A DNA stretch of 64,000 bases from Octopus sinensis (lineage: Eukaryota), in the NCBI RefSeq assembly GCF_006345805.1, contig NC_043001.1, forward strand, positions 37,882,001 to 37,946,000, written 5' to 3'. The number at the start of each line of letters is the position of its first letter. The stretch's first letter is position 1. Position numbers and translations under genes: made by a program. Of the stretch, positions 9,480 through 61,157 are shown one piece after another. Below the pieces are notes generated by a model, which did no database searches, was not told the DNA's origin, and saw only the letters and a list, made by a program, of their open reading frames with translations.

Positions 9480-10465
9480 ATCTAAAGGGAGGAGATATTC
9501 TCCAATGACAAAGAAAAAACAACAGCATTCAGGTTATTGTGTTTGAATCTGCTGGAACATATTAAGAATGAATAAATACTTTATTGTTTGGATTCTTGCT
9601 GTTTCACATGCAATTCATGAATAATTTTCTTTTTGGCAAACATCAGCAAATAATTTGTTTGCTGATTTCTATAATCAAGAGCCTTCACCTTTGCTAGTTT
9701 CATTGGTCAGTTGGAGTAGCTATGACTAAGGAGGCACACAATGAAGTCGAAACTTTGCTGTATCTAAAAGTCCCCTTATACCTGTGAGCCATCTGTGATT
9801 GGAACACATGCTGTCTAAAGGAAGATATTCTCCAATGGTGAAAAACGGCAGCAATTAAATATTACCATTCAAATCTGCCAGAATGCATTAAGAATGGATA
9901 GATACATTACTGTTTGGTTTCTTACTGTTGTGTGTTCACCTCATGAATTATTTTCTTTCTTCTCATCTCAGAGTATAAATTAGACCCATTTCTTTACAGA
10001 TACATTAATTTCATCAAATCATGAGGAATGTGTGAAAGGCTAGATTGATAACATCATTTGAACTCAGAACTATTTTTTTCTTTGTCTCTAAATAAACTAA
10101 TTCTCCAGTCATTTTGAATTGACTTTAGCATGTGTAACAATGTTAACCCATAGTACTAAAGAAATAAATTTTAATATTGAGGACAATGTCTTTTGTGAAT
10201 GATAAGAAAAAAGAATAGCTTTATATATTTACATAGCGGATACTCATGTCTGCACCCTGTTATCCTCTTCAGATCATTGACTTTTGAACTCCTACTACTA
10301 TACTTTGATAATAACATTTCCACTCCTATTACTGCAACTGCTACCACAACCACCACCACTACCGCCACCATTATCACTGAATACTACAACAAATCCAAAC
10401 AATTTTACAAGTACCTATCTAAAATAACAACAACAACAACAAAAGCAACAACAATAATAATAATG

Positions 10466-17700: not shown

Positions 17701-18190
17701 GAAATCATCATCGTTTAACGTCCGTTTTCCGTGCTAGTACGGATTGGATGGTTCGACCAGGGTCTGGGAAGCCAGGAGGCTGCACCAGGCTCCAGTCTGA
17801 TCTGGCAGTGTTTCTACAGCTGGATGCCCTTCCTAATGCTAACCACTCCATGAGTGTAGTGGGTGCTTTTTATGTGCCACCGGCACAGAAGCCAGTCAAA
17901 GCGGCACTGGCATCAGCCAAGGCGGCGCTGGCATCAGCCATGTCAAAAAAATCGGAATTGACATGAGAGTGGAGCAATCCCCAAAACATTGGTCTGCTAG
18001 GGACAGCTAGGATTTTGAATATCACTCACAATAATTACCAACCAAGTATTAAGGTTTATAATGTGTGGAAAGAGACCCTGTGAGACCTCTGACAACAGGT
18101 GGCTGTCCACTCTCACAGAATCTATCAGAACAAACAAGACTGTACTTTCTGAGAAAAAAAAAGCAATAATAATAATAATAATAATAATAT
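14760..18190 (+). mobile_element. Decayed R4/Dong-clade (RLE) non-LTR retrotransposon with nested insertions
   Basis: LIDQTREIHKNDWIMEVEIEKIQR, NFQPVTCLPLMWKLMT, LLYMDDLKIF, GYKYLGILE, CRMC..CSNLAQKHYKQRHDNV, QNIGLLGTARIL, (AAT)n tail; many stops and frameshifts. Confidence 0.85.
17304..17513 (+). mobile_element. SINE family B inserted in the R4-like LINE
   Basis: Flanked by a 14-bp direct repeat AGAAATGAAACAAT (17277-17290, 17514-17527). Confidence 0.85.
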
Positions 18191-23914: not shown

Positions 23915-26900
23915 AATAAGAATTATTGGATGCTGGATACTGGATGGTTTCCGTGTTGAAGCTCCTAGGAGCTTGTTCACAGGTCTTTTCCACTAGTACA
24001 ATTAATTTGTCATGTGTGGTACAACACTTCAACAGTTGTAGCTAATAGTAACAGACAGGGTCAAATTTTGCTGGAAGCTTCTTCCAGTGTGCATCAAGCA
24101 TGTTTTTGAAGGCATTGATTGATGGAACTGTGATCACACTGTTTGACAGACTGTTCCATGTGGGGGTCGCATGCTGTACAAAAAAGCAGCTTCTAATATT
24201 GAGCCTACAGTGTGATCTTTCCAATTTTAGGTTGTGTCCTCTCGTATTTCTGCCTTGGAAGTAGTTAAATTGGGGGCAGTTGATCAGGTACAGGCTGTGC
24301 GTATACTTATACATGTTGATCATATCCCCGCTCAGAAGGTGATGTTTGAGACTAGACAGCGCTCTGGGTATGGCTTTTCTTTCAAGGATGCAATGAGTTT
24401 AGTGGCAACACATTGCATTATGCCGGGGTTGCCAAACTGTGTGTCTATATTCAAGAATCTGGCGAACTAGAAACTTGTACAGGTGGACGAAGACAACGGG
24501 TGATGAAGTGAAATAATCATCGGATGACTCCAAGGATTCGATTTGCTTTTGCAGTTGCTTGGTTTATGTGGTTCCTGAAGGTCAGCACTTTGTTGATCAA
24601 GACGCCAAGATCCCCCTCCACCTCACTTTCTGCTAGCTCCATCACAGTCCGTTCCCCCTGTGCATCCTAGCCTCTCATGTAGTATTTCTTGTCCATCTTC
24701 GGGTTCCCCACTCTCAAGACGGAACACTTCTCAAGATGGAACCGCATTTGCCAGTTCATCGACCACTTGTGAAGGCGATCCAGGTCGTCTTGCAACGTTG
24801 CCGTGGTCACATCAACGTAATTCCTTGCGAAGAATTTTGTGTCGTCAGCAATAACCTGACGTGCCTCTGGACATGCCGCGGCAGATCATTTATATACATG
24901 AGAAACAGTACGGGGCCAATGACATTGCTTTGTGAGATGCCACTTGTCACCTCTCCTCTCTCTGACTTCACGCCATTGAAACAGACTCATTGTGACTGGT
25001 GGCTCAAGAAGTTCCGGATCCACTGAAGGACATTTCCCTTGATACCATGAGCTTCTACTTTGGCTACAAGCCTACGAGGTGGGACACTGTCGAATGCTTT
25101 CATGTTATCCATGTAGATCGCATTGAGTCCTCCCCCTGCGTCCAGATGTCAAGAACATCAAGTATTTGCATCACACATGATCTCCCCTTTGTGAACCAAT
25201 GCTGTTCTTGGTTGATGAGGTCATTTCGCCGCAGGTGTTCAATGATGTTCTCACGAACAAGCACCTCCATCACCTTGCACAGTACACAAGTCAAGCTTAC
25301 TGGCCTGTAGTTGTTGACCACAAAACGGCTCCTTTTCTTGAATATGGGGGTGACGTCAGCAGTTCTCCACTCGTCTGGGATTTTGCTTGTCTCCATTGAT
25401 TTTCTGTAGACAATTGTGATTGGTAGAGCGAGTACATCCGATAGCTCGGAAAGTATGCATAGGCTGATTCCATCCGGTCCTGGGGTCTTGGCAATCTTCA
25501 GGCTTGTCAGCTGCTTGTGAACTTTTTCCACAGAAATGTTTAAGTTGGTCAGCTCTGTGTCATATGTGTACTCTGACATGTCTGGTAGATTGCTTTCCTT
25601 CTCTACAGTGAAGACACTCTGAAAGAAAGTGTTCAGCAGATCGGCTTTCTCTTTGTCTGTGATTGTCTTAGAACCATCACTTCTTTTCAAGTCTGCAGTA
25701 CCAGTCTTTGATTTCGTCTTTGACATCACGTATGACCAAAATGACTTCGGGTTTGTCTTGGCTTGTGTTGCTACCATTTCCTCTAATTTCTTCTTTGCTT
25801 TATGGCATGCCTTTGTCCCTTTATTTCTGCTCCTAATGTAGGTTTGAAATCTTGCCCAACGTCTATACAGTTTGTGCTTCTGCCACACTGTTCTAAGTGT
25901 ATCTCTATCGAGTCACTTCTTCCTTCTTGCTCTCGAGCCTCCCATCTTTGGTACATATTTCTCTGTTACTCTGTCCAATTCCTTGCGCAGCTTTTCCCAT
26001 GCCTCTCCAACTGATAGACATTTCAGCTCATCCACCCATCTGATATTTTCCAGGTCTTTCCTCATCTCTTTAATATTTGCCTTTGTAAAGTTGAAATATT
26101 CTTTCTTTCCTGTTTCTTGGTATGCATAGGACAAGCTGATGATTAATACTACATGGTCACTCTTCCCAAGGGATGGTGCTATAATGATATCATTGATCAT
26201 GTCTTCCCTGTTTGTCATCACCAGGTCATCTAAAGTTGGACACTCTCCTTCCCTGATTCTTGTTGGTTCTCTCTGGTGCTGTATCAGGAATGCTTCCTTT
26301 GTCGCCATGAAGAACTTGTTCGCTGCATGGTTCTCACCTTTTAGACTCCTGTCTTGTTCCCAATTTATATCGGGGTAGTTGAAGTCGCCGATTAGCAGTA
26401 GATATTGAGGTTTCTTGTCTGCCATGTTTAATAGCAATCTGTTTAGACTCTCATTATTTTCCTCTGAGTTTGTATTTGGGCTCCTGTAGAACAATCCAAA
26501 TGTTATAGTTTCTTCTCATAGTTTACAATCTATGAATGCACACTCTTCGAAGTCCATCTCTAAATCACCATTCAAGGATGGTCTCAGCTCATTCTTAACA
26601 TATAAGCATTATCCTCAACCTCTTTTCTCGAGATTGTGAAATGGTTCATATCTGGGAATTGTGATTTCACTCTCTTGGATGTCAAATCTCAAGTTCTTTG
26701 GTTTAATCACCACAACCCCCATCACTACAGGCTTACGTATCTCTATCATGGCCTCTAATTCAGTCCTTTTATTTAGAAGACTGTCAGTATTTGTATATAG
26801 ACAGGTAACTGAACTATGGCTATTCAACGTATATACATTTGGTCTTTTGTAAATAATTTTATAGCGGTCCGTGGTGCAGGATGATTTAAAACTATCTACA

Positions 26901-27970
26901 CACTTTCCGTTTATTCTGTCTAATTGCCCTCCTCCTCTCATGGTGGCTTCCGGTATTCCCCGATGTTCACCACTTTGCCATTTCTACACACACAATTCGT
27001 TGTGTTGTTCCCCGATTACTTGGCCTGATCTTGTTTCTCTTTGAGCTCCTTGAAGAGTGCTTCTTCCTCTTTCCTCTCTGAGGAGGTCATGTCATTTCTC
27101 GCATTGACATTCCTGATCAGCTTGGGTTCATCCACTTCATCTTGCTTTTTTTTTTTTGCTGCTTTCTTAACTTTCCAGAAAGTTTAGAGAACTTCATCCC
27201 TGGAGTGTTGGTTGGAGAACGAAAGCCTTAGTGGTCTAAAATTCTTTGCTTTTGTTTTTGCTACAATGAGCTTTCCAAGTCTACGGACATCTTTTGGGTC
27301 ATGCAGGCTATCCAAGCAGTCAATCGCTTTCATGAACCTCTTTACACTGCCAACATCTTCCTGTCTTCTTTTCTCTTTATCTTCCATAGTTGGTTCATCC
27401 AGTCCAAATATGACCAAATTTTTGTTCCTTCTTGCTCTGTCTTCCGACTCCACTCTTTGCTCTCTAGCTTTCTCCTCCATCAATTTCTCAATGTCATTTT
27501 TGCTGATTTCTGCTCCCGACGTTTCATTTGCTGCAACTCCTACTGCTAACAATGTCTTCACTGCTTCTGCCATCTTGGGTGGGAATTCTCCCGCTTCAAT
27601 CTTTTGAAGTCTGTTCTTCGTTTCCTTCATCTCACTTTCAAGAGAGTCCATTCTATCCTCCATCATACCAAATCTAAGGAGGAACTTCCTGGCAAGCTAA
27701 TTGCCCAGTTTGGGACAATACCAAGAGAGGCCAGATCCCTGTTCCCTTTGGTTTGTTTCTGCTCTGATTGCCTTGAACAGTGATTCGCCAAAACCCAAAC
27801 ATTTTGTGTGGTACCAGGCATGGCACAGCTCACAGCCAACTGACCTCTGTTTATCCTCCCCTTCTTCCTCACATATGTTGCAAATGCTCAGTTGCTTTTT
27901 GTTTTTTTGGTCCCTTTCAGTTCCTTTATCAGCAAACCCATACATGCATCCACACAGGCTGAGAAACAAT
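23915..27970 (-). mobile_element. Near full-length CR1-clade LINE with PHD-finger ORF1 (disrupted), intron 2
   Basis: ORF1 C-x2-C...CELCHAWYHTKC...WYCP; APE (CLYTNTDSL, IGDFNYPDINW, SDH); RT (PGPDGI, NYRPVSLT); C-terminal TPTWNSL. Confidence 0.93.
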
Positions 27971-38160: not shown

Positions 38161-39715
38161 TCAAAATCAAATCAAATCAAATCAAACCAAATCAAAATAG
38201 ATGAACATCAATGGAATTTGTATCTTTGTGGTACCAGTACCGGTGGCACACAAGAAAACCATCCGAACGTGGCCGTAGCCAGTACCGCATCGACTGGCCT
38301 CTGTGATGTGGGCACATAACAAACACCATCCGATCGTGGCCGTCCACCAGCCTCATCTGGCACCTGTGTCGGTGGCACATAAAAACACCAACCGAAGACC
38401 CGGCAAGACTAGTCAGGCCATAACCCGTGGCCCCTACTTGGGACGTAGTTAGTCCACCTGTGCATACCTTCCTTCCTTCTTGTGACACTTGTGAAGACCT
38501 GTGAAGACCTGTTGAGGCAAGTGAAAATCAAATCAAATCAGATCAAAATAGATGAACATCAATGGAATTTGTATCTTTGTGGTACCAGTGCCGGTGGCAC
38601 ACAAGAAAACCATCCGAACGTGGCCATAGCCAGTACCGCGTCGACTGGCCTCCGTGCTGTGGGCACGCAACAAACACCATCCGATCGTGGCCGTTCGCCA
38701 GCCTCATCTGGCACCTGTGTCGGTGGCACATAAAAACACCATCCGAAGACCGGCAAGACTAGTCAGGCCATAACCCGTGGCCCCTACCTGGGACGTAGTC
38801 AGTCCACCTGTGCATACCTTCCTTCTTGTGACACTTGTGAAGACCTGTTGAGGCAAGTGAAAATCAAATCAAATCAAAACAAATCAAAATAGATGAACAT
38901 CAATGGAATTTGTATCTTTGTGGTACCAGTGCCGGTGGCACACAAGAAAACCATCCGAACGTGGCCGTAGCCAGTACCGCGTCGACTGGCCTCCATGCTG
39001 TGGGCACGCAACAAACACCATCCGATCGTGGCCGTTCGCCAGCCTCATCTGGCACCTGTGTCGGTGGCACATAAAAACACCATCCGAAGACCCGGCAAGA
39101 CTAGTCAGGCCATAACCCGTGGCCCCTACCTGGGACGTAGTCAGTCCACCTGTGCATACCTTCCTTCTTGTGACACTTGTGAAGACCTGTTGAGGCAAGT
39201 GAAAATCAAATCAAATCAAAACAAATCAAAATAGATGAACATCAATGGAATTTGTATCTTTGTGGTACCAGTGCCGGTGGCACACAAGAAAATCATCCGA
39301 ACGTGGCCGTAGCCAGTACCGCATAGACTGGCCTCTGTGCTTTGGGGACGTAACAAACACCATCCGATCGTGGCCGTCCGCCAGCCTCATCTGGCACCTG
39401 TGTCGGTGGCACATAAAAACACCATCCGAGCGTGGCCGTCTGCCAGCCTCGTCTGGCACCTGTGTCGGTGGCACATAAAAACACCATCCGAGCGTGGCCG
39501 TTCGCCAGCCTCGTCTGGCACCTGTGTCGGTGGCACATAAAATCACCCACTACACTCTCGGAGTGGTTGGCGTTAGGAAGGGCATCCAGCTGTAGAAACA
39601 CTGCCAGATCTGACTGGCCTGGTGCAGCCTTCGGGCTCCCCAGACCCCAGTTGAACCGTCCAACCCATGCTAGCATGGAAAACGGACGCTAAATGATGAT
39701 GATGATGATGATGAT
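38161..39715 (+). mobile_element. Multimeric RTE-tailed non-coding retroposon (array A)
   Basis: Unit marker AAAATAGATGAACATC at 38194, 38545, 38886, 39228; ends in the RTE-type 3' stem-loop and (GAT)n. Confidence 0.85.
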
Positions 39716-40789: not shown

Positions 40790-42120
40790 TCTTACAAGTT
40801 ACTTGGCAACCCTCTGATGTTGGTGCCACATAAAAAGTACCTGTGCCAGTGCCACATATAAAGCACCTGAGCCAGTACCATGTAAAAAGTACCCAGTACA
40901 CTCTGGAAAGTGGTTGACATTAAGAAGGGCATCCAGTCTAAATAGACAATTGAAACCTGGTACACTCCTCCAGTTTACCAACTCCTGTCAAGTCATCCAA
41001 CCCATGCCAGCATGGAAAACAGATATTAAATGGTGATGATGATGACAACTGATGCTGGTGTGTTTACATCTCTGTAACTTAGCGGTTTGGTAAAGGAGAC
41101 CGATAGAATAAGTACTAGGCTTACAAAGAATAAGTCCTGGGTTCGATTTGCTCGACTAAAGGTGGTGCTCCAGCATGGCTGCAGTCAAATGACTGAAACA
41201 AGTAAAAGAGTAAAAGAGTAATTGGACATGTGCAAAGGTCTTCTGCCTACATGCAGACACAAGCATTTGCACAAGCCTTTTCAGGTGCTGAGAACCATTT
41301 CCTGGACACTTACTAGATATTTCTATCAAAACAACAGCATTAGAGAAGCCACAGTCAATGCAGGCACAATATGTTGTAGATCCAGTGTGATTGAAATGCC
41401 AGAGCAGGGGTACATATATTTCTGTGTTGGTAATAGCAATGATGTTAGGAGTGTGAATATAATTTTAGCAAAGAAATGGGTAAATAAAGTGATCAAGATA
41501 ATCAGAATGTGTAACAGGATAGTTAACTTTACACTAGTTTTGGAAAATATTTGAGTTACATCTCTGCATATGATCCACAATCTAGACTGGCAGATAAACA
41601 GGGGAACAGATTTCAATGATCTTTAAACTCTGCTTGCGAAGACCTGTTGAGGCAAGTGAAATCGAAATCAAATTCAATGACAGCATCGCATGACTGGCAC
41701 CCATGCTAGAGGAGCACTGAGAGCACCATCCGAGCATGATCATTGCCACGGCCGGTGACTGGCCCCCATGCCGGCGGCACGTAAAAAGCAGCATTTTAGT
41801 GTGATTGTTACCAGTGTCGCCTTAGTGGCACTTGTGCCAGTGGTACGTGGAAAAACAACATTCGAGCAAGGGTGTTGCCAGTACCGCTGGGCTGGCTCCT
41901 GTGCAGGTGACACATAAAAATACCATTTGAGCGTGGCCACTGCCAGTACCGCCTGACTGGCCCTCATGCCGGTGGCATGTAAAAGCACCCACTACACTCT
42001 CAGAGTTGTTGGCGTTAGGAAGGGCATCCAGCTGTAGAAACTCAGTCGGATCAGATTGGAGCCTAGTGCAGCCATCTGGCTTGCCAGTCCCCAGTCAAAC
42101 CGCCCAACCCATGCCAGCAT
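40790..42120 (+). mobile_element. Cluster of RTE pieces (3' tail at 40790-41045; APE remnant at 41225-41640 fused to 3'UTR at 41640-42120) with an intervening SINE A fragment
   Basis: ILAKKWVNKVIKIIR APE trace; shared 3'UTR blocks. Confidence 0.7.
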
Positions 42121-44162: not shown

Positions 44163-45056
44163 CATCATCATCATCATTTAACGTCCGCTTTCCATGCTAG
44201 CATGGGTTGGACGATTTGACTGAGGGCTGGTGAACCAGATGGCTGCACCAGGCTTCAATCTTGATCTGGCAGAGTTTCTACAGCTGGATACCCTTCCTAA
44301 TGCCAACCACTCCAAGTGTAGTGGGTGCTTTTACGTGCCACCAGCATGGGGCCAGTCAGGCGGTACTGGCAATGACCTCACTCAAATCTTTTACACATGT
44401 CACTGGCACAGGTGTCAGTAAGGTGATGCTAGTAACGATCAAGCTCAAATGGTGTCTTTTACATGCCACTGGCATGGAGGCCAGATAGCCGCTCTGGCAA
44501 TGATCACGCTCGGCTGGTGCTCTTAACACCCTTCTAGCATGGGGCTCAAGTGCCAGCAAGGCAACGCTGGTAACGATTACACTCGAATGGTGCCTTTTAT
44601 GTGCCACTGGCACGGAAGCCGGTTAACCGCTCTGTCAACAATCATACTTGTATGGTGCTCTTTGCACCTCGCTAGCATGGATGCCAGTCATCGAATTTGA
44701 CTTTGATTTTGATTTCACTTGCGTCAACAGGTCTTCGCAAGCAGAGTTTTTGTGTCCAATGAAGGAAAAGGTACGCATAAGTGGGCTGGTTATGCCTCTG
44801 GCATAGGCCATGAGATTGTGGTCTCATTTGGCTTGCTGGGTCTTCTCACGCACAGCATATTTCCAAAAGTTTCACTAGTCATTTCCTTGGTGTGGCCTAA
44901 AGTTCAATGGTCGTGCTTCACCAACCACTTCATCCCAGGTCTTCCTGGGTCTACCTCTTCCACAGGTTCCCTCAACTGCTAGGGTATGGCACTTTTTTAC
45001 ACAGCTATCCTCATACATTCTCGCCACATGACCATACCAGCACAGTCGTCTCTTGC
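44163..45056 (-). mobile_element. 5'-truncated RTE (ORF2 end plus 3'UTR)
   Basis: GRPGMKW...WKYAVREKTQQAK* followed by the modular 3'UTR and (GAT)n. Confidence 0.85.
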
Positions 45057-45852: not shown

Positions 45853-46901
45853 AAAATGGGCCCCAAACAGAAAATTCTTGTCCACCAGTTCCACCCACAA
45901 CCACACAAGCACCAACTACCACCACTCTACCAACAACTACAACCAGGCCAACAACTACAACCAGGCCAACAACTACAACTAGACCAACAACTACAACCAG
46001 ACCAACAACTACAACAACACCAACAACTACAACCACACCAACAACAACAACCACACCAACAACTACAACCACACCAACAACTACAACCACACCAACAACT
46101 ACAACAACAACAACCACACCAACTACAACCACACCAACAACTACAACCAGACCAACAACTACAACCAGACCAACAACTACAACCAGACCAACAACTACAA
46201 CCAGACCAACAACTACAACCACACCAACAACTACAACCACACCAACAACTACAACCAGACCAACAACTACAACCACACCAACAACAACAGCAACAACCAC
46301 ACAATCAACAGCTACAACTGCACCAGGACTAACAACAACTACACCAACCATCAAAAGGACCCTTTCACCAAGGACATCAACAAAAGGTACAAACCTCCCA
46401 AGCTCAATAATGAGTACAAAAATGGAATATCATTCAAGCAAAACCATTTCAAAATTATCAACAACTTTCCATCCTGGTAAAGATATTTCAACAGTTTCAA
46501 TATTGGACATTATAAAGAACAGTACAAAGATGTTTAATACCAATACTCCTACGCAGAAAACATCTATAGCATCTACAACTAACAATATACTACCAACAAC
46601 TTTACTTCATCATAACACAAATGGACACAAACAAACTAAGACAACATCTGTCGGAAATAAAGTTACCAAACCAAGCAAAGGTTTTACCGTTTATACCACT
46701 ACTGAGAGTAGCAGAAGCAAATTTGAAAAAATGAAAAGCAATCTTCACAAGAAAAGAACAGTTATCCTTGCATCCATTTTTGGTACTGCAAGTATTTTAG
46801 CAATTGTATTCACGATTGTATGGAGCAGACGAAGATCAAAGAAACATTCAAAGTTGTTAGATGATAAAGTCCCTGTATTGTCTCTTGATGCCATGAAATG
46901 A
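45853..46901 (+). CDS. Exon 5: last MAM Cys, Thr-rich mucin stalk, TM helix, cytoplasmic tail, stop
   Basis: ctttcttttcag|AA, phase 1. Open frame continuous with track ORF 46410-46901. TM segment TVILASIFGTASILAIVFTIVW followed by SRRRSKK. The five exons total 1530 nt = 509 aa + TGA. Confidence 0.85.
45931..46280 (+). repeat. Coding minisatellite, 18-bp unit CCAACAACTACAACCA(C/G)A = PTTTT(T/R), about 19 copies
   Basis: Directly visible tandem repeat inside exon 5. Confidence 0.9.
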
Positions 46902-47599: not shown

Positions 47600-50500
47600 T
47601 TATTGAATTAAACTGATAATATGAGGATCTTGAGAAGACTTGCCAATTGTGACAAAACTGACTTCTGCAAGCACTGCATACAAGAGGTAAGATGGAGAGG
47701 TGTAGGGGGTGTAGGCATTCTCTTTGCGGAGATATGGGTGGATAAGGTTATAGAGGTTGTCAGGGTATGCGATAGAGTGCTCAAGCTCAGGTTAGTCCTA
47801 CAGAACGGCACAGCTACGATTATCTCCGCCTATGCCCCACATGCAGGGCTACCAAATGATCAGAAGGACCACTTTTATGATACCCTTCTTGGGCGAGAAT
47901 CGGGTATCTTCACTGGGGTACACAGTGGCCATGGTATTGGCACCAGAAATGATGAGGGAACTAGACTACTGGAATTCTGTGATGCATGTAACCTTTTAAT
48001 CTGCAACACTAACTTCAGGAAGCCAGACTGCCACCTTATAACCTATCAGTCAGGGGACTCTGCTAGCCAAATAGACTTCATCCTCACCGGACAGCGGGAT
48101 GCTGAGTTGCTCTTAAATACAAAGACCCTCCCAGGTGAAGAATGTACACCCCAGCATAGGTTAGTCATTAGTGACTTTAGGCTTGAGGCCAGAAGGATAC
48201 TAAGAAGCAGACCAATCCAGAAAAGAAGGATTTGGAAGCTAAATAACCTTCTCATGGTCAGAGATTTAGGGACATCCTCATCAAGAAATTTGATGAGAGG
48301 GAGGAGGAGCTACAGACGTTGGACATAGAAGGTAGCTGGAAATTCTTACGGGACAGCTTACTGAGTGCCTCTGACCAAGTCTGTGGATGGTGCAAAGTCC
48401 CTTCCAGACCTAGAGTTTTGTGGTGGGGGAATAGTACAGTAGACAAAGCTATTAGAGCAAAGAAACAGGCCAAGAACTCCTGGAGGGATGGGGGTAGCAG
48501 GGAACTGTACCAGGTAGCCAAAAGGGAGGCTGGGCAGCAGGTATACATAACCAAGGGTGAAGCAGAAAAGAAGAAGTTTGCCAATGTCCAACGACATGAG
48601 AACCAAAGAACTGAGGTATTTCAGATTGCAAGACAGTGTGTGAGAGAAAATAGTGATGTCACAGGAGAGAAATGCATCCGCATGGATGATGGTGCACTTG
48701 CTTTCAATGTTTCTCATTATAGCTTGGAGAAGCTATCATGAGAGACTACTGAATGTGGAGAATGAATGGGAGGAGGAGAGCCTACCAAATGTTGACCCAG
48801 TAGAGGGACCAGCTATTCGAATAGACAGCTCCCTAGTAGTTAAGGCAATTAAGGGTATGAAACCAGGAAAAGCCCCTGGCCCATCAGGAATCACTGCTGA
48901 GATGCTTAAAACATCTGGTTGTGTGGGCTATGGCCTAGTCACCTGCATTATAAACCAGGTAGTTCATAATGGAGTCAGACCCAATGACTGGCGTAGCAGC
49001 ACCATAGTCAACTGCTACAAGGATAAAGGTGATGCTCTAGATAGAAATAACTACAGGGGTATTAAACTGTTGAATCAGGTGATGAAGGTCACAGAGAGGG
49101 TCATAGCCCATCTCATTAGGGAGAGAATTTGCTTAGATGAGATGCAGTTTGGTTTTGTGCTGGGTAGAAGCACCACTGATGCCATATTCCTGGTTCAACA
49201 ACTGCAGAAGAAATACCTAGCTAAAGATAAACCCCTCTACATAGCTTTCGTGGATTTGGAGAAAGCCTTTGACAGGGTCCCCCGATCCCTTATCTGGTGG
49301 TCGATACGGAAACTGGAGATTGACGAATGGTTAATAAGGGCTGTACAGGCCCTATACAGAGAGGCTGTCAGCAAGGTTAGGATTGGCAATGAGTATAGTG
49401 AAGAATTTCGGGTAGAAGTAGAGGTCCACCTAGGTTCAGCCCTCAGTCCCCTTTTATTCATCATAGTCCTCCAGGCAATAACAGAGGAATTCAAAACAGG
49501 TTGCTCCTGGGAACTCCTCTATGCTGATGACTTGGCCCTCATAGCAGAATCACTACCGGAACTAGAAAAGAAATTTCGGGTGTGAAAACAAGGTTTAGAA
49601 TCAAAGGGCCTTAGAGTAAATGTAGCAAAGACCAAAGTTATAGTAAGCAGAAAGGTGAACTCATCACACACACCCTTGGGCAGGTGGCCCTGCTCGATCT
49701 GTAGGAAAGGTGTAGGTAGAAACTCCATAAGATGTACCCAGTGTAAGCTATGGATGCATAAGAGATGCAGCAACATCAAAGGAAAATTAACTGATAAGAT
49801 AGCTTTCATGTGCAGCAGATGCACAGGGGCAATAGACACCATAGATACTCAGAAAACAGATTTCATCACACTCCAGGGGGAGAAACTAGAAGTAGTTGAT
49901 AGTTTCTGCTACCAAGGTGACCAAGTTAGTAGTGGAGGTGGATGCTCAGAGAGTTTCACCACTAGAATACCAATAGCCTGGGCAAAGTTTAGAAAGCTCC
50001 TACCTCTACTGGTGACAAAGGGTCTCTCGCTCAGAGTGAAAGGTAGATTGTATGATGCATGTGAACGAACTGCCATGCTTCACGGTAGTGAAACATGGGC
50101 TGTGACTGCAGAGGACATGTGTAGACTTGAAAGAAATGAGGCTAGCATGATCCGCTGGATATGTAATGTCAGTGTGCACACACGACAGAGTTTAAGCACC
50201 CTGAGAGAAATGCTGGACATAAGAAGCATCAGATGTGGTGTGCAAGAGAGACGCTTGCAATGGTATGGTCATGTGCTGCAAGCTGGCAGAAACGTTAGCA
50301 CGCCGGGCGAAATGCTTAGCGGTATTTCATCTGCATTACGTTGTGAGTTCAAATTCCGCCGAAGTCGACTTTGCCTTTCATCCTTTCGGGGTCGATAGAT
50401 TAAGTACCAGTTACGCACTGGGGTCGATGTAATCGACTTAATACCTATGTCTGTCCTTGTTTGTCCCCTCTGTGTTTAGCCCCTTGTGGGTAATAAAGAA

Positions 50501-51208
50501 ATAGGTATGGTCATGTGCTGCGGATGGATGAGGAGAGATGTGTGAAGAAGTGCCACTCCCAAACAGTTGAAGGTATCATGGGGAGAGGTAGACCCAGGAA
50601 GACATGGGATGAGGTAGTCAAGCATGACCTCCGAGCGTTGGGCCTCACAGAGGCATTGACGAAGGACCAAGATCTCTGGAGATATGCTGTGACTGCAAAG
50701 AGCTGGGCTGCTTCCTGCACCAGTTTCACATAGCCCCAGCCCATTCAAAGTACCTTGGATTGCAGAACGATCTGCTGTGCTTACCTTGGATCATAGAGTG
50801 ACCTGCTGTGTTTGAGGAGACCTATTGAGTCAAGTACATCAACATCAAAATAAATATCAAATGGAAATAGCAGCTGTGATACCTGTGCCGGTGGCACGTA
50901 AAAGGCACCATCCGAACGTGGCCGATGCCAGTGCCACCTTGACTGGATTCTGTGCCGGTGGCACGTAAAAGCACCAACTGATCGTGGCCACTGCCAGCCT
51001 CCCCTGGCACCTGTGTCGGTGGCACGTAAAAAGCACCCACTACACTCACGGAGTGTTTGGCATTAGGAAGGGCATCCAGCTGTAGAAACACTGCCAGATC
51101 AGACTGGAGCCTGGTGCAGCCTCCTGGCTTCCCAGACCCCTGTCGAACCATCCAACCCGTGCTAGCACGGAAAACGGACGTTAAACGATGATGATGATGA
51201 TGATGATG
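47600..51208 (+). mobile_element. RTE-clade LINE, 5'-truncated and disrupted
   Basis: APE (CIQEVRW, QIDFIL, QHRLV), RT (GKAPGPSG, YRGIKL, FVDLEKAFDRV, LLYADDL), PHD-like insert, RGRPRKTW, 3'UTR, (GAT)n. Confidence 0.95.
50280..50503 (+). mobile_element. SINE family B inserted in RTE ORF2
   Basis: 18-bp TSD GGTATGGTCATGTGCTGC (50262-50279, 50504-50521); the RTE frame resumes after it. Confidence 0.92.
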
Positions 51209-52079
51209 ACATTGTTTATGTGTAATTTTATGTGCCCTGGAATAGACTTTTCAAAAGCATACAGATACTTAACTATCCTCAGGGAACACTTTATTATATC
51301 AAGTTACAGATACCTATGTCTTAAGTTGGATGGAAGACTTATTTTTGGAGGTAAATAGAGAAAACAAGAGGATGGAAAAGATGTATCCTAAATACAAGAG
51401 AGAAGGAGAAGAGAAAGAGACTAAGCAGACAACTAAATTATGGAGATAAAAAAAGGAAAAAGATGAAGAGAAAGATAGAAAGAGGTAAAGAGAAAATCAA
51501 TAAGGGGGTAAAAGGGAAAATGAAGAGAAAGAAAGACAGGCATAAAGAATAGACAAAGAACAGATAAATTAGAGTAACTTGTTTTACAAAAGCAGAGGTG
51601 AATTATCTCACATAATATAAAAGCAACGTGTGTTCAGTCAATCATGGTGGTAGAGGAAAACTAAAACAACAAATGAAGTGGGTGTGAGTAACAGTCAGAG
51701 ACGCTAAATGTAGGCAAACTATAGTGAGAGGTTTTTACTCTGAGGTTTTTCACAGTGAAAATGTGTGTAGGGAGGGAAATTACACTCTTTTGTTTTCAAA
51801 ATGTTGTTCACATAACATTTATGTATATAGATAGATAGATAATGTATGTATGTATGTATGTATATATATATATATATATATATATTATTTATATATATAT
51901 ATATATATATATTGAGTAGTTGAATGAATTATCTTATTAAGGATAATTCGAAAGATAACCGGTACCTGGGTACCTGGGTGGCAAATTCACATCAGAAAGA
52001 ACACAGTTGAAGTTACGTCCCTAGGGCATAGACTACATGCTTTCGTGCGGAAATTTGTATGTTTATTTTAAAAATATAA

Positions 52080-52334: not shown

Positions 52335-52600
52335 ATATGTATATATCAGCACCGCTTTGACTGGCTTCCATGCCGGTGGCATGTAAAAAGCACCCACTAC
52401 ACTCACGGAGTGGTTGGCGTTAGGAAGGGTACCCAGCTGTAGAAACACTGCCAGATCAGACTGGAGCCTGGTGCAGCCTTCTGGCTTCCCAGATCCCGGT
52501 CAAACCGTCCAACCCATGCTAGCATGTAGAACGGACGTTAAACGATGATGATATATGTGTGTGTGTGTGTGTGTGTGTATGTGTGTGTATATATATATAT

Positions 52601-55157: not shown

Positions 55158-58100
55158 AAGAGAGGGAGATATATCATCATCATCATCATCATCATTTAAC
55201 GTCCGTTGTCCATGCTGACATTGGTTGGACAGTTTGACCAGGGCTGGCAAGCTGGAAGGCTGCACCAGACTCCAGTCTGATTTGGCATGATTTTCTACAG
55301 TTGGATGCCCTTCCTAATGCCAACCATTCCAAGAGTGTAATGGGTGCTTTTACATGTTACTGGCATGGGTGCCATTTGCATGATACCAGTATTTGCCACG
55401 ACTGTGATTTTACTTGGCTTGATGTGTTTTCTTCTCAAGCATAACAAAATACCAAGATCTCAGTCATTCGTTATTTCCTCCATGAGGCCCAACATTTGAA
55501 AGAGAGCATTTCATGTGCTACCAGCATCAGCCACATTGCCTTTGTGAGGCCCAACGCTTGAAAGGTGCTCTTTATGTACCAGTTACTTGACACCAGCATC
55601 AGCCACGACTACACCGTACACTTTGAAAGACTTTCAGAATGGAAATCATGCCAAAGCAGACATTGGAACAGAATACAGTCTTTAGACAACCCCCCATTGT
55701 TCCTGTCAAACCATCCAATCCATACGAGCATGAAAGATGAACATAGAATGTTACCGCTGCTGCTGCTGATGATGATGATGACGCTGATATATGGTGATCA
55801 TTATCATCATTTAACATCTCCTTTCCATACTGGCATGAGTTGGGCAGTTTGACAGGAGCTGGCTAAGCCAGAGCCAGACCAGGTTACATTGTCAGTTTTG
55901 ATATGGTTTCTACAGTTAGATGCCCTTCTTAACGTCAACCACTTTAGACGCCTTTCCTAATACTATTTTACAGAGTGTACTGGGTACTTTTTATGTGGCA
56001 TGAGCATTAGTGCTTTTTACATGACACCAGCACCAGTGTTTTTTACCTGACATCAGCACTGTCACGTTCACCAAGTACCTTGCACAAGAAAAAACCCTTC
56101 AACTAGGAGGCAGGAGTACTATTGAAATCATGAGGTTTTGTGGCAGTTGAGAGATTCAAGGTTTAGAAGGGACAGATCTAAGTGTCTTGCTGAAGAGTAG
56201 ATACATGCACACCCCAGTTGGGAAACATTGGAGAGTAAGATAAAAAGAGTGATAGGGAAAGAGGTAATGGCTGAGTCGTGTCAAGACATGCTCTTAAGGG
56301 ACACTTTCAAGCTTTCACAAGTCTTCTGTACCCAAAACCCATGTTTCACTGCTATGTAGCATAGCTTTACATACACAAGCATCATACAATCTACCTTTCA
56401 TTCTGAGAAGGAGGCCTTTAGTTACCAACAAAGGTAGGAACTCTCTGGACTTTGCCCAGACCATTCTTATTCTAGCAACTACACTTTAAGAACTTCCTCC
56501 TCCACTGCTAACTTGGTTACCTAGGTAACAGAAGCCTTCTAGTACTTCTGATCCTCCCACCACTGAGCATTTGAGGGTTTGCACATATTGTTTGTGCATT
56601 TTTTATGTATATTGTACCTGTACATTTGTCATACACAAAGTCTATTTTCTTCATTAACCTCCCTCTAATACTGCTACACCTCTTATATGTCCAAAGACTG
56701 CACTGGGTACAACATATGAAGTTTTTACCAACACCCTTATTACATATCAAGCACGGCCATCTCCCTGAAGGGACATGTAATTTGTTTTCCTATTTACTAG
56801 GACCTTCAGATACACACACACACACACACAATTATGTGCGCAAATATATGCCCATAGTTCTCCTATGCCCAAGCTCATGTGTGAACAAATATAAACACAC
56901 ATATACAAGAAGTCATATGCGCACATGCACTTGAACTTCCTTCACAAAGGTGGTGATGATTCAATTGAGATCATGACTAGACAGCCTTTAACAAAATTTT
57001 CTGATAGAAACTGAAAGTTATTTGCTTATCAACAGAGAACCCTTATATTTAGTGATTGTAAGAGTGACAGACAGATTGATAGAGACAGGTCCATAATATC
57101 ACAGAGAGAAAAAGAGAAAGAGAGGTGATACAATTACTATCCTTAAGATAGAATTCAAATTGAGAAATTGTTGGGGGATAGGCTTTAGGGTCTAAAGGAA
57201 ATTGTAACACAGTTATACAGTCACATACACAGGAGCAGTAATAAAGTTCAAAAGGCTGAAGATGATAAAAAATTAGTTTGCTTAGCTTAGTTTTAGTCCA
57301 GGTGGCAACTCAGTACACCAGCCCAACCATTTGGAGGTAAACTGAGACCATGTGTTTAAGTCCCTTCGTAATACCCAAAGACCCATGACAACACAAGAGA
57401 ATCTGTAAGTGTTGGAAGAACTATGAGCCTTTTTACTATCATCATCAGCATTATTTACAATATGCAAGAGCGATGGAAGAACTATTAACCCATTTACCAC
57501 CACCACTGCTGCTGACACCATCGTAATTGTTATTATCATCATCATCAAGATTGTACAAAGAGCACATCTACCAAATATATCCTTTATGACTCAATACAAG
57601 AGAGTTTGACAGAAACTAAAAGTTATTTGCCTATTGATAAGGAACTCTTATTTTTAGTCCTTCTAAGAGAAATAAACAGAATGAAAGAGAGGGACAGACA
57701 TACACACATAAATCATCATCATCATCGTTTAACGTCCGCTTTCCATGCTAGCATGGGTTGAACGAATGACTGAGGGCTAGCAAACCAGATGGCTGCACCA
57801 GGCTTCAATCTTGATCTGGCAGAGTTTCTACAGCTGGATACCCTTCCTAATGCCAACCATTCCAAGACTGTAGTGGGTGCTTTTACGTGCCACCAGCACG
57901 GGGCCAGTCAGGCAGTACTGGCAACGACCTCGCTCAAATCTTTTACACATGCCACCGGCACAAGTGCCAGTAAGGCGATGCTGGTAACGATCACGCTCAG
58001 ATGGTGTCTTTTACGTTCCACTGGCACAGAGGCCAGATAGCCACTCTGGCAACGATCAGGCTCGGATGGTGCTCTTAATACCCTACTAGCACAGGGCTCA

Positions 58101-59270
58101 AATGCCAGTAAGGCGATGCTGGTAACGATCACGCTTGAATGGTGCCTTTTAAGTGCCACTGGCATGGAAGCCAGTTAGCCGCTCTGTCAATGATCATATT
58201 CGTATGGTGCTCTTTGCACCCCGCTAGCACGGACACCAGTCATCGAATTGTGCATATATATATATAATCATCATTTAATGTCCAATGACCATGCCAGCAT
58301 TGGTTGGACAGTTTGACCAGGCTGGCACACTGGAAGGCTGCACCAGACTTCAGTCTGACTTGGCATAGTTTTCTATGGCTGGATGTCCTTCTTAATGCCA
58401 ACCACTATAAGAGTGTAATGGGTGCTTTTATATGCCACTGGAATGGGTTTGATTTGCATGACACGGGTGCCAATTTGCATGACACCAGTATCTGCCATGC
58501 CTGCAATTTTGCTCAGCTTGATGGGTCTTCTTCTCAAGCACAACATAATGCCAAAGGTCTCAGTTATTGCCTCCATGAGGCCCAACGCTCAAAAGGAACT
58601 CAGCCACTTTGCCTTTGTGAGGCCCAACAGTCAAAAGGTATTCATTACATGCCACCAGCACAAGTGTACTTGGCTTGATGGGTCCTCTCATGCACAGTAC
58701 ATCAGCAAAAGTCTTGGTCACTAGTCATTGCCTCTGTGAGGCTCAAAGTTCAAAGATCATGCTTCACAATCTCGTTTCATGTCCTCCTGGATCTACTTCT
58801 ACCACTAGTTCCCTCCACAGTTAGAGATTGGCACTTCTTTACACAGCTATCCTCATCCATATGCATCACATAACCATACCAGCGCAGTCATCTGTTGCAC
58901 ACTACATCTGATGCCTCTTATGCCTAACTTTTCACTCAAGATGTTTATACTCTGTTGAGCATGCACACTGACAATGCACATCCAGCAAAGCATACTGGCT
59001 TCATTTCTTTCAAGCCTATGTATATCCTTGGCTGTCACAGCCCACATTACACTGTCATGCAGCATAGCTGTTTGCACTCAGGAATCAAACAACCTGCCTT
59101 TCACTCTGAGAGAGAGCCCTTTGTTGCCAGCAGGGGTAGGAGCTCTCTGAACTTTGCCCATCCTAATCTTATTCTCACAGTTACGCTCTCTGAGCATCCA
59201 CTTCCACTACTAACTTGGTCACCTAGATCAGTGCTACTTAAAGTGGGGGTCCACAGCGAGTTTCCAGAAA
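54650..59270 (-). mobile_element. Cluster of RTE 3'UTR and ORF2 fragments (~54650-54900, 55177-55650, 55800-56080, 56370-56790, 57713-58250, 58268-59270)
   Basis: Repeated CAT-tailed 3' ends; MLHDSVMWAVT..RLERNEASML and CTQCSLWTYKRC traces. Confidence 0.75.
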
Positions 59271-59363: not shown

Positions 59364-61157
59364 CATCATCATCATCATCATCATTTAACGTCCGCTTTCC
59401 ATGCTAGCATGGGTTGGACGGTTCAACTGGGGTCTGGGGAGCCCGAAAGCTGCACCAGTCCAGTCAGATCTGGCAGTGTTTCTACAGCTGGATGCCCTTC
59501 TAACGCAAACCACTCCGAGAGTGTAGTGGGTGATTTTATGTGCCACCGACACAGGTGCCAGACGAGGCTGACAAATGGCCACGCTCGGATGGTGTTTTTA
59601 TGTGCCACCGACACAGGTGCCAGACGAGGCTGGCAGACGGCCACGCTGGGATGGTGTTTTTTATGTGCCACGACAGGTGCCAGACGAGGCTGGCAGAAGG
59701 CCACGCTCGGATGGTGTTTTTATGTGCCACCGACACAGGTGCCGACGAGGCTGGCAGACGGCCACGCTCGGATGGTGTTTTTATGTGCCACCGACACAGG
59801 TGCCAGATGAGGCTGGCAAACGGCACGATCGGATGGTGCTTGTTACGTGCCCACAGCACGGAGGCCAGTCGATGCGGTACTGGCTACGGCCACGTTCGGA
59901 TGGTTTTCTTATGTGCCACGGGCACTGGTACCACAAAGATACAGATTCCATTGATGTTCATCTATTTTGATTTGTTTTGATTTGTTTTGTTCACTTGCCT
60001 CAACAGGTCTTCACAAGTGTCACAAGAAGGAAGGTATGCACAGGTGGACTGACTACGTCCCAGGTAGGGGCCATGGGTTATGGCCTGACTAGTCTTGCCG
60101 GGTCTTCGGATGGTGTTTTTATGTGCCACCGACACAGGTGCTAGATGAGGCTGGCGAACGGCCACGATCGGATGGTTGTTTGTCATGTGCCCACCGCACT
60201 GACTACGGCACTGATGGATTTCTTGTGTGCCACAGGCACTGGTACACCAAGATACAAATTCCATTGATGTTCATCTATTTTGTCTATTTTGATTGATTTG
60301 ATTTTGATTTTCACTTGCCTCAACCGGTCTTCACAAGTGTCACAAGAAGGAAGGAAGGTATGCACAGGTGGACTGACTAGTCTGCCGGGTCTCGGAAGGT
60401 GTTTTTTATGTGCCACCGACACAAGGTGCCAGATGAGGCTGGCGAACGGCCATGATCGGATGGTTGTGTTACATGCCCACAGCACGGAGGCGGTCGATGC
60501 GGAACTGGCTACGGCCACGTTCGGATGGTTCTCATGTGTGCCACCGGCAGGTGTTGTTAGTGCCCACAGCACGGAGGCCGGTCGATGCGGAACTGGCTAC
60601 GGCCACGTTCGGATGGTTCTCATGTGTGCCACCGGCACTGGTACCACAAAGTGTGTGCCACCGGCACTGGTACCACAAAGATACAGATTCCATTGATGTT
60701 CATCTATTTTGATTTGTTTTGATTGATTTGATTTTCACTTGCCTCAACAGGTCTTCACAAGTGTCACAAGAAGGAAGGTATGCACAGGTGGACTGACTAC
60801 GTCCCAGGTAGGGGCCATGGGTTATGGCCTGACTAGTCTTGCCGGTCTTCGGATGGTGTTTGATGTGCCACCGACACAGGTGCTAGATGAGGCTGGCGAA
60901 CGGCCACGATCGGATGGTGTTTGTCATGTGCCCAGAGAACGGAGGCCAGTCGATGCGGTACTGGCTACGGCCACTTTCGGATGGTTTTCTCTTGTGTGCC
61001 ACCGGCACTGGTACCACAAAGATACAAATTCCATTGATGTTCATCTATTTTGATTTGTTTTGATTTGATTTTGATTTTGATTTTGATTTTCACTTGCCTC
61101 AACAGGCCTTCACAAGTATCACAAGGAGGAAGGTATGCACAGGTGGACTGACTACGT
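59364..61157 (-). mobile_element. Multimeric RTE-tailed retroposon (array B), same family as array A
   Basis: Reverse-complement markers near 59948, 60261, 60690, 61031; (CAT)n at 59364; same unit junction; candidate TSD ATATTCAT. Confidence 0.85.

What the first reader, a model, noticed from the sequence alone, without database searches (positions are those of the whole stretch)
38161..39715. Multimeric ~340-bp-unit retroposon ending in an RTE tail (retrozyme-like organisation)
Seen: periods of 351, 341 and 342 bp. Each unit is RTE ORF2-end/3'UTR sequence, an (AAATC)n spacer and three hairpin modules, joined at CACCATCCGAAGACCCGGCAAG. The same junction occurs in the independent opposite-strand copy at 59364-61157, which is truncated at a different 5' point, so the multimer itself was mobilised. 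Known: metazoan non-LTR retrozymes are tandem repeats of a few hundred nt that yield monomeric and circular RNA through a ribozyme. No canonical ribozyme is visible in this unit. Inference: an undescribed non-autonomous family copied from a concatemeric or circular RNA.
Basis: partly seen in the sequence, partly recalled or inferred. Interest (0 to 1): 0.72.

Follow-up and report, generated by a model that had tools for sequence, protein, structure and literature searches.

The report
RTE retrotransposon copies with repeated 3'UTR
Two independently inserted, 5'-truncated copies of an octopus RTE-type jumping gene carry a ~341-bp block of its 3' untranslated region repeated three to four times; this is an ordinary tandem duplication inside a transposon, not a ribozyme-based "retrozyme".

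Summary
At 38161-39715 (+) a ~341-bp unit occurs 3.7 times (periods 351/341/~340, 94% match). It is followed by two extra 62-bp modules and an RTE-type tail ending in (ATG)n. The copy at 59364-61157 (-) has the same junction three times, unrelated flanks and a different 5' end, so the junction predates both insertions.

The unit is the proximal 3'UTR of an RTE-type LINE. A single-copy relative on an Octopus vulgaris chromosome (L015, 84% identity) has the same sequence once, beginning 4 nt after its ORF2 stop codon. The last unit runs straight on into the parental module and tail, with 2 nt (GA) of microhomology. That is what a simple head-to-tail duplication of an internal segment predicts.

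No ribozyme was found: Rfam gave nothing relevant at E<=10 on either locus, and CUGANGA is absent on both strands. The unit folds no better than shuffled sequence, has 51% GC, and no breakpoint reading fits GT-AG back-splicing.

Best reading: a VNTR-like 3'UTR expansion in an RTE subfamily or its derivative, spread by ordinary target-primed reverse transcription with 5' truncation. I could not establish whether the master is autonomous, or how many copies exist genome-wide. Interest is low.

The parts
38161..38395 (+). Locus A, 5'-truncated outermost unit. It starts in the (AAATC)n spacer and continues through the mid segment, modules a and b, and the 10-nt stub of module c.
   Evidence: It carries more private substitutions than the other A units (10 observed against 3.5 expected, Poisson P=0.003).
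38396..38746 (+). Locus A unit 1 (351 bp). It carries a 10-bp TGTGAAGACC duplication and a 4-bp CTTC gain.
38747..39087 (+). Locus A unit 2 (341 bp), the unit closest to the consensus.
39088..39426 (+). Locus A unit 3, the 3'-most unit. Its end, CACCATCCGA, continues into GCGTGGCC, that is into parental module c rather than another junction.
39417..39540 (+). Two 62-bp c modules. The O. vulgaris relatives L015 and L017 have one.
39541..39715 (+). RTE-type 3' tail (CACCCACTACACTC...) ending in (ATG)n.
   Evidence: 14 such tails occur in the window, and this one is 96% identical to the locus B tail. It is 98.7% identical to an O. vulgaris copy in L017.
60849..61157 (-). Locus B, 5'-truncated outermost unit. 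It starts at ACGTAGTCAG, 49 nt into the unit.
60399..60848 (-). Locus B unit 1 (450 bp), enlarged by internal 29-bp and 88-bp tandem duplications.
60106..60398 (-). Locus B unit 2 (293 bp), with a degenerate junction and internal deletions.
59771..60105 (-). Locus B unit 3, the 3'-most unit. It has an exact junction at its 5' side.
59536..59780 (-). Four 62-bp c modules.
59364..59535 (-). RTE-type tail with (ATG)n.
47621..51212 (+). Near-full-length but decayed RTE-type LINE of a different subfamily. It has APE endonuclease, RT, a PHD-like finger and a C-terminal domain, then the same 3'UTR layout once (3'UTR, spacer, 2.5 modules, tail). A 225-bp SINE interrupts it at 50280-50504.

Best explanation
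Both loci are 5'-truncated copies of one young subfamily of an RTE-type (probably RTE-BovB-like) non-LTR retrotransposon of an octopus, or of a derivative of it. In a transcribed master copy, a ~341-bp internal segment of the 3'UTR was duplicated head to tail. That segment runs from about the ORF2 stop codon to the first 10 nt of the third 62-bp module. The duplication then expanded to at least about 4 units, like a VNTR, by slippage or unequal exchange. The 3'UTR of these elements is already built of 62-bp modules that vary in number between copies. Transcripts of the master keep the single, unrepeated RTE tail plus (ATG)n at the 3' end. The RTE reverse transcriptase uses that tail for target-primed reverse transcription, and premature termination gives the two different 5' ends inside the array.

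**Shown here:** the anatomy, the shared junction, the independence of the two insertions, the single-copy relatives, and the absence of known ribozymes.

**Inferred:** DNA-level duplication in a master copy, the identity of the mobilising enzyme, and the timing of unit expansion.
For: **Array and junction.**
- The array and the junction are far beyond chance.

**Single-copy relatives.**
- The O. vulgaris relative L015 9019-11846 has ORF2, the stop codon (11241-11243), then GAGA|AGACCCGGCAGG. The whole unit sequence follows once, then module c and the tail.
- The in-window RTE at 47621-51212 has the same order once.

**Shape of the duplication.**
- The 3'-most unit of both loci continues into module c (CATCCGA|GCGTGG), as an internal tandem duplication predicts.
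- The junction shows 2 nt of microhomology, GA.

**Smaller-scale repeat instability in the same region.**
- Module c is present 1x in L015 and L017, 2x in locus A and 4x in locus B. L018 has about 5 modules.
- Locus B has 29-bp and 88-bp duplications, and locus A unit 1 has a 10-bp duplication.
- Other RTE subfamilies in the window have 138-bp two-module repeats next to their tails, at 44428-44680 and 57957-58214.

**Independent insertions.**
- The flanks are unrelated and the 5' ends differ.
- The two tails are 96% identical to each other, against <=89% to the other 12 RTE tails in the window.

**The subfamily exists in O. vulgaris.**
- L017 holds a short copy (tail 98.7%, unit part 94.8% identical), truncated inside the 3'-most unit.

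**No ribozyme.**
Against: - No copy was seen in which the array is preceded by ORF2, so an autonomous master with the array is not shown.
- The two 5' ends fall within about 70 nt of each other in the same (fourth) unit. That has roughly 8% probability under random truncation of a 1.8-kb template (my estimate), and could mean a discrete ~4-unit element.
- Parsimony-informative sites group units within a locus (A1+A2, Ap+A3, B1+B3, Bp+B2). None groups units by position across loci. A single fixed heterogeneous master is therefore not supported. Several of these sites are CpG sites, and only two copies are available.
- About 61 kb of sampled O. vulgaris sequence (L015, L017, L018) contained no multimer.
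Confidence: 0.6

Rival explanations
1. The multimer forms at the RNA or cDNA level. The RTE reverse transcriptase reaches the 5' end of a 3'UTR-only RNA fragment, which begins at about the ORF2 stop codon. It then jumps to an internal site (CACCATCCGA, 2-nt microhomology) of another such RNA, repeatedly. The multimer is made, or remade, during retrotransposition rather than being encoded by a master gene.
For: - Non-LTR reverse transcriptases do jump templates serially. R2 proteins make longer products by jumping to further 3'UTR RNAs, and head-to-tail tandem transgene copies were seen in cells (PMC11371274; PMC8857657).
- The left breakpoint sits within a few nt of the ORF2 stop codon, a plausible RNA end.
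- Units are nearly homogeneous, and variants group within loci, not by position across loci.
- Both copies stop in the fourth unit.
Against: - Template jumps normally go to the 3' end of an acceptor RNA, which would place a tail and (ATG)n at every junction. No junction contains tail sequence.
- The identical internal acceptor site would have to be reused six times in two loci.
- Unit A_p is significantly more diverged than A1-A3. Subsets of units also share variants. Neither is expected if all units were copied from one template at one time.
Confidence: 0.15
2. This is a retrozyme-like life cycle. A ~341-nt monomer RNA is excised and circularised, and then copied by rolling-circle reverse transcription into tandem cDNA.
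For: Unit size (about 340 nt) and tandem organisation resemble metazoan non-LTR retrozymes of 170-400 nt (PMC7229834). The units are fairly homogeneous.
Against: - No hammerhead, HDV-like, twister or other Rfam ribozyme was found at E<=10 on either locus or strand, and no CUGANGA core is present.
- The unit folds no better than shuffles (z = +0.17). Its GC is 51%, against <45% for retrozymes.
- The RTE tail that primes reverse transcription is outside the repeat and occurs once.
- Animal retrozymes derive from Penelope-like elements, not LINEs (bioRxiv 10.64898/2026.07.22.740005).
- With L015 as proxy for the parent, no breakpoint split gives both an AG acceptor and a GT donor for back-splicing.
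- Units within a locus are not identical, and subsets share variants.
Confidence: 0.04
3. Only a dimer (one junction) was retrotransposed. The three to four units at each locus arose afterwards, in place, by unequal crossing-over or replication slippage.
For: - Within-locus sharing of variants (A1+A2 differ by only 1.8%; B1+B3 and Bp+B2 alternate).
- The outermost A unit is older-looking than the inner ones.
- Locus-specific small duplications show that in-place slippage occurred.
Against: Both loci would have had to reach nearly the same unit number (3.7 and 3.85) independently. Cross-locus distances (A2-B3 3.0%) are as small as within-locus ones.
Confidence: 0.15
4. The two loci are one segmental (inverted) duplication, or an assembly artefact, and the multimer never moved.
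For: The two copies lie only 21 kb apart, in opposite orientation.
Against: - Two kilobases of flank on each side show no collinear similarity.
- The 5' ends differ, c-module numbers differ (2 against 4), and each locus has its own indels.
Confidence: 0.02

Closest known systems
RTE-clade (RTE-BovB-type) LINEs of cephalopods and their 5'-truncated copies
   Same: - The in-window relative has an APE endonuclease plus RT in a single ORF, and is about 3.35 kb long.
- It ends in a short-tandem-repeat 3' tail, and copies are massively 5'-truncated.
- RTE-BovB is reported as greatly expanded in cephalopods (PMC10294476). RTE families are reported active in O. vulgaris (PMC13282606; PMC9115989).
   Different: The proximal 3'UTR is present 3-4 times, not once. 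The described RTE-2_OV has a microsatellite-dominated 3'UTR, not this module and tail layout.
Transposon-internal tandem arrays that travel with the element: mouse L1 5'UTR monomer arrays and the SVA VNTR (from my own knowledge, not tested here)
   Same: A unit of a few hundred bp, or tens of bp, is repeated a variable number of times inside a retroelement. It is inherited through retrotransposition, and truncated copies end inside the array.
   Different: Here the array is in the 3'UTR of an RTE-type element. Variation in the number of 341-bp units between copies is not yet shown. Only variation in the number of 62-bp modules is shown.
Metazoan non-LTR retrozymes (Cervera & de la Pena 2020, PMC7229834)
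   Same: Head-to-tail repeats of a few hundred nt that are dispersed in the genome and non-coding.
   Different: - There is no hammerhead ribozyme.
- GC is 51%, not <45%.
- A unique LINE tail sits outside the repeat.
- The sequence derives from a LINE 3'UTR, not from a Penelope-like element pLTR.
Head-to-tail products of template jumping by non-LTR reverse transcriptases (R2; PMC11371274, PMC8857657)
   Same: It is a way to obtain tandem cDNA copies of a 3'UTR-bearing RNA without any ribozyme.
   Different: Known jumps go end to end, so each junction would carry the 3' tail. These junctions join an internal module site to the start of the 3'UTR and contain no tail.

Membership tests
RTE-clade non-LTR retrotransposon (copy or derivative) | Single ORF with an APE-type endonuclease followed by a reverse transcriptase, in the autonomous partner | tested here: met
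   The in-window relative at 47621-50733 matches Exo_endo_phos_2 and RVT_1 (E=4e-22). Loci A and B themselves carry no coding sequence.
RTE-clade non-LTR retrotransposon (copy or derivative) | 3' end made of a conserved tail plus a short tandem repeat, shared by the autonomous and truncated copies | tested here: met
   The 157-nt tail plus (ATG)n is present at A, at B, in the in-window RTE and at 11 other sites. It is also present in the O. vulgaris copies.
RTE-clade non-LTR retrotransposon (copy or derivative) | Phylogenetic placement of the RT inside the RTE clade | not tested
   No reference RT set was available. The length (3.35 kb) fits the ~3.2-3.6 kb given for RTE-BovB (PMC10294476). 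Homologues carry only generic names.
RTE-clade non-LTR retrotransposon (copy or derivative) | Variable 5' truncation of insertions | tested here: met
   Locus A starts in the spacer and locus B 49 nt into the unit. Other tail-bearing copies are roughly 170 to 3570 bp long.
Metazoan non-LTR retrozyme | A type I hammerhead ribozyme in every unit | tested here: not met
   Rfam cmscan at E<=10 found no ribozyme on either locus. The whole window gave nothing at gathering score. No CUGANGA on either strand.
Metazoan non-LTR retrozyme | Tandem units of about 170-400 nt | tested here: met
   Periods of 351, 341 and about 340 bp.
Metazoan non-LTR retrozyme | Low GC (<45%) and highly self-paired monomer RNA | tested here: not met
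   GC is 51%. The MFE is -93 kcal/mol against a shuffle mean of -93.9, z = +0.17.
Metazoan non-LTR retrozyme | Monomeric linear and circular RNAs in vivo | not testable with these tools
   No transcriptome data were reachable.
LINE-mobilised SINE (non-autonomous) | Pol III-type head (tRNA, 5S or 7SL) at the 5' end | tested here: inconclusive
   ARAGORN finds no tRNA-like sequence in the window. However, both copies are 5'-truncated, so the true 5' end of the master is unseen.
LINE-mobilised SINE (non-autonomous) | 3' tail shared with the partner LINE | tested here: met
Transposon-internal tandem duplication / VNTR | The last unit runs on into the parental sequence; the unit is a contiguous internal segment of the single-copy parent | tested here: met
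   The L015 single-copy layout compared with A and B.
Transposon-internal tandem duplication / VNTR | Copy number of the repeat varies between copies of the family | tested here: inconclusive
   Shown for the 62-bp module (1, 1, 2 and 4 c modules; about 5 modules in L018). For the 341-bp unit only two truncated arrays (3.7 and 3.85 units) are available.

The most novel reading that the evidence does not exclude
The ~4-unit multimer is a discrete, ribozyme-free, non-autonomous element made only of RTE 3'UTR. It would be generated by serial template switching of the RTE reverse transcriptase on 3'UTR fragments whose 5' end lies at the ORF2 stop codon, or less likely on a circularised monomer. 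That would be a LINE-dependent route to dispersed tandem repeats, and so a way for satellite-like DNA to be seeded by retrotransposition.
Probability: 0.12. Interest if true: 0.5.

Novelty: new member of a known kind. Interest (0 to 1): 0.2.

Why it matters
It mostly matters for annotation. Octopus genomes are about 45-66% repeats, with RTE LINEs and many unclassified SINE-like families. A subfamily whose 3'UTR is a 341-bp macro-repeat will be split by repeat finders into 'satellite', 'SINE' and 'LINE' pieces, and it can be mistaken for a new class of element.

It also shows, in one family, 3'UTR repeat instability at three scales: 62 bp, about 130 bp and 341 bp. Such arrays are dispersed by retrotransposition, which is one way transposon-derived tandem repeats get seeded around a genome.

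If the minority reading (template-switch concatenation from stop-codon-proximal RNA ends) were right, it would be a modestly interesting mechanism.

Tried and rejected
**Junction scan of JGI metagenome contigs.** It gave 14 hits. All are 20-22-nt chance matches in high-GC bacterial contigs.

**Scans for a unit-specific 24-mer.** GTDB genome contigs and IMG/VR viral contigs gave 0 hits.

**Protein-space route to other copies.**
- A six-frame peptide query around the junction found nothing.
- A full HMMER scan with the 108-aa stop-free antisense reading of one whole unit found 4 proteins. The three I looked up (P0226, P0227, P0229) are O. vulgaris gene models. P0226, P0227 and P0229 cover only modules or the tail, and none of the four spans the junction.
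- Searching with RTE ORF2 and with P0063 returned only one Octopus protein. A survey of autonomous copies was therefore impossible.

**Source of the window.** Looking up an in-window RTE ORF to learn where the window comes from found nothing on record.

**A spurious alignment of my own.** My first alignment put the unit start on the GRPRKTW motif of ORF2. The closer relative L015 showed this was wrong, and that the unit starts just after the stop codon.

**Nested insertion.** One RTE copy landing inside another would explain the junction only if the junctions contained tail or (ATG)n sequence. They do not, so I rejected it.

**Back-splicing.** Rejected on splice-site grounds, using L015 as proxy for the parent.

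**Literature search for printed tail sequence.** No papers.

**Bacterial promoter/terminator scan.** Irrelevant for a eukaryote.

Full report
**1. What is in the sequence**

Locus A (38161-39715, + strand) is a head-to-tail array. TRF gives period 342, 3.7 copies, 94% matches and score 2217 at 38169-39429. It gives a second array of a 62-bp module at 39355-39547.

Cutting at the junction CACCATCCGA|AGACCCGGCAAG gives these pieces:
- a 5'-truncated unit (38161-38395)
- three full units of 351, 341 and 339 bp
- two extra 62-bp 'c' modules (39417-39540)
- a 157-nt tail (39541-39697) ending in (ATG)n

The 22-mer junction, allowing small variants, occurs three times in A and three times in locus B (59364-61157, - strand). 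Shuffles give none.

Locus B has the same architecture, with these differences:
- it starts at a different point (ACGTAGTCAG, 49 nt into the unit)
- it has four c modules
- it carries its own 29-bp and 88-bp duplications and deletions

Two kilobases of flank on each side show no collinear similarity between the loci. They are therefore independent insertions and not a segmental duplication. TSD candidates are weak: ATAACT lies 12 nt from the A boundary, and ATGAATAT at B overlaps the tail.

**2. What the unit is**

The window holds a near-full-length but decayed LINE at 47621-51212 (+). It has an APE endonuclease, RT (RVT_1, E=4e-22), a PHD-like finger and a C-terminal domain. It is 3.35 kb long once an inserted SINE is removed. 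Its 3' end has the same order once: end of ORF2, 3'UTR, an A-rich spacer, 2.5 modules, and the same tail with (GAT)n.

A protein search with its ORF2 C-terminus found an Octopus vulgaris gene model, P0063, on chromosome OX597814.1. The 20.9-kb locus around it (L015) contains an RTE copy (9019-11846). Its 3' region is the closest single-copy relative of the unit, at 84% nucleotide identity.

Reading L015, ORF2 ends ...TATGCTGTG TGA at 11241-11243. Then comes GAGA|AGACCCGGCAGGACAAGTGAGGCCATAACCCGTGG... The whole unit sequence follows once:
- proximal UTR
- (AAATC)-like spacer
- mid segment
- module a
- module b

After that come module c and the tail.

So the repeated block is the proximal 3'UTR, starting 4 nt after the stop codon in that subfamily. 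In the more distant in-window RTE the homologous position lies in the last ~11 codons. The block ends 10 nt into module c. My earlier alignment of the unit start to the GRPRKTW motif was spurious.

In both A and B the 3'-most unit continues CATCCGA|GCGTGGCC, that is into module c and then the tail. The breakpoints share 2 nt (GA). This is the exact signature of a head-to-tail duplication of an internal segment.

**3. Organism and family**

- A second O. vulgaris locus (L017, chromosome OX597841.1) carries a short copy of the same subfamily. Its tail is 98.7% and its unit part 94.8% identical to A. It is truncated in the spacer of the 3'-most unit and has one c module.
- A third locus (L018) has about five modules and the tail.
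- The window is therefore from Octopus vulgaris or a very close relative.
- The window contains 14 RTE-type tails. Only those of A and B are 96% alike; the rest are <=89% identical. Only A and B repeat the proximal UTR.
- The literature reports RTE-BovB as greatly expanded in cephalopods (PMC10294476). It also reports RTE families as recently active in O. vulgaris (PMC13282606; PMC9115989).
- I did not place the RT in a reference phylogeny, so 'RTE' rests on domain order, length and tail type.

**4. Tests of the retrozyme or circular-RNA idea**

- Rfam at gathering score finds nothing in the window. At E<=10 on each locus, both strands, there is no ribozyme family, only a few chance snoRNA or miRNA-like hits.
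- The hammerhead core CUGANGA is absent from both strands of both loci.
- The 341-nt unit folds at -93 kcal/mol against -93.9 for shuffles, z = +0.17. Single modules, the tail and the junction region have z between -1.0 and +0.8.
- Aligned modules from several subfamilies share three short stems. Compensatory changes occur at only two pairs.
- Unit GC is 51%. Metazoan non-LTR retrozymes are described as <45% GC, carrying a type I hammerhead in each unit (PMC7229834), and deriving from Penelope-like elements (bioRxiv 10.64898/2026.07.22.740005).
- With L015 as proxy for the parent, none of the three possible breakpoint placements within the GA microhomology gives both an AG before the unit and a GT after it. 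A canonical back-splice is therefore not supported (reasoned).
- The tail needed for priming lies outside the repeat and occurs once.

**5. How the array behaves**

| Unit pair | Substitution distance |
|---|---|
| A1-A2 | 1.8% |
| A2-A3 | 2.7% |
| A2-B3 | 3.0% |
| B1-B3 | 5.8% |

Locus B is the more decayed of the two.

The few informative sites group units within a locus (A1+A2, Ap+A3, B1+B3, Bp+B2). None groups them by position across loci, and several are CpG sites. Unit A_p has 10 private substitutions against 3.5 expected (P=0.003).

These patterns argue against all units being copied from one monomer at one time. They do not separate a heterogeneous, evolving master array from some expansion or conversion in place. 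Two copies are too few.

The same UTR region shows instability at smaller scales:
- variable numbers of c modules (one in L015 and L017, two in A, four in B)
- 10-, 29- and 88-bp duplications
- 138-bp two-module repeats next to the tails of other subfamilies at 44428-44680 and 57957-58214

**6. Explanation**

The best reading, at about 0.6, is this. A transcribed master of this RTE subfamily, autonomous or a derivative, acquired a tandem duplication of its proximal 3'UTR. The duplication expanded to at least about 4 units. Ordinary target-primed reverse transcription from the unique tail, with 5' truncation, produced A and B.

The rivals are:
- serial template switching by the RT on 3'UTR fragments, about 0.15
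- retrotransposition of a dimer followed by in-place expansion, about 0.15
- a ribozyme-free circle copied by rolling circle, about 0.04
- segmental duplication or artefact, about 0.02

For the template-switching rival, template jumping by non-LTR RTs and head-to-tail tandem products are documented for R2 (PMC11371274; PMC8857657). However, end-to-end jumps would put tail sequence at each junction, and that is not seen here.

One point keeps the 'discrete non-autonomous element' idea alive. Both 5' ends fall within about 70 nt of each other in the fourth unit. That has roughly 8% probability under random truncation (my estimate).

**7. What could not be done**

No tool could search an octopus genome by nucleotide sequence. 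The following remain unknown:
- genome-wide copy number
- the distribution of unit numbers
- whether any copy joins the array to ORF2
- whether the family is already in Repbase or Dfam

About 61 kb of O. vulgaris sequence reached through gene models contained related single-unit copies but no multimer. That sample is small and not random.

**8. Verdict**

The retrozyme-like interpretation is not supported. The feature is a VNTR-like 3'UTR expansion carried by an RTE-type retrotransposon subfamily. It is a new member of a known kind and of low general interest, though useful for repeat annotation in octopus genomes.

Noticed in passing
window 50280-50504, with TSDs at 50263-50279 and 50505-50521: A 225-bp SINE-like insertion sits inside the C-terminal part of ORF2 of the in-window RTE. 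It has a B-box-like GAGTTCAAATTCCGCC and ends ...AATAAAGAAATAG. It is flanked by a perfect 17-bp target-site duplication, GTATGGTCATGTGCTGC. It has no RTE-type tail, so a different LINE partner mobilises it. ARAGORN does not call a tRNA in it.
   Followed up: partly
window, 14 sites listed (for example 17710-17868, 41983-42120, 44173-44330, 52388-52546, 55191-55349, 57724-57882): RTE-type tails occur about once per 4.6 kb in this window. Most belong to copies shorter than 1 kb. The region from 38 to 61 kb is largely a pile-up of RTE fragments.
   Followed up: partly
window 44428-44680 and 57957-58214: Repeats of period 138 bp (about 1.8-1.9 copies), made of two-module blocks, lie directly upstream of the tails of two other RTE subfamilies. 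Module-level duplication is general in these 3'UTRs.
   Followed up: partly
window 49655-49830 (ORF2 downstream of RT); also P0002 and P0049: The RTE-type ORF2 carries a PHD-finger-like zinc finger just after the RT domain (Pfam PF00628, E=1.7e-5 here, 3.5e-8 in a homologue). Homologues with the same RT plus PHD layout are abundant in cnidarian, amphioxus and many unlabelled assemblies.
   Followed up: partly
L017 10001-10390 (P0226), L018 10001-10405 (P0229), and P0227: Three 'Hypothetical predicted protein' gene models of Octopus vulgaris (CAI9742642.1, CAI9741473.1, CAI9744441.1) are antisense translations of RTE 3'UTR modules and tails. They are annotation artefacts. The P0226 model appears to 'splice out' about 63 bp, roughly one module.
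   Followed up: partly
window 25100-27666 (- strand): A second decayed LINE is present, with Exo_endo_phos_2 and a weak RVT_1 match. No RTE-type tail lies nearby, so it probably belongs to another clade.
   Followed up: no
window 269-513 and 45929-46289: A perfect 122-bp x 2 tandem duplication (100% identity) and an 18-bp minisatellite (ACCAACAACTACAACCAC, about 20 copies).
   Followed up: no
L016 (metagenome scaffold XUSH22-1_SAMN16869661) and P0085 (labelled a Herbaspirillum MAG): Sequences 69-71% identical in protein to the octopus RTE sit in metagenome or MAG records. L016 has a matching RTE tail. This looks like animal DNA carried into microbial assemblies.
   Followed up: no
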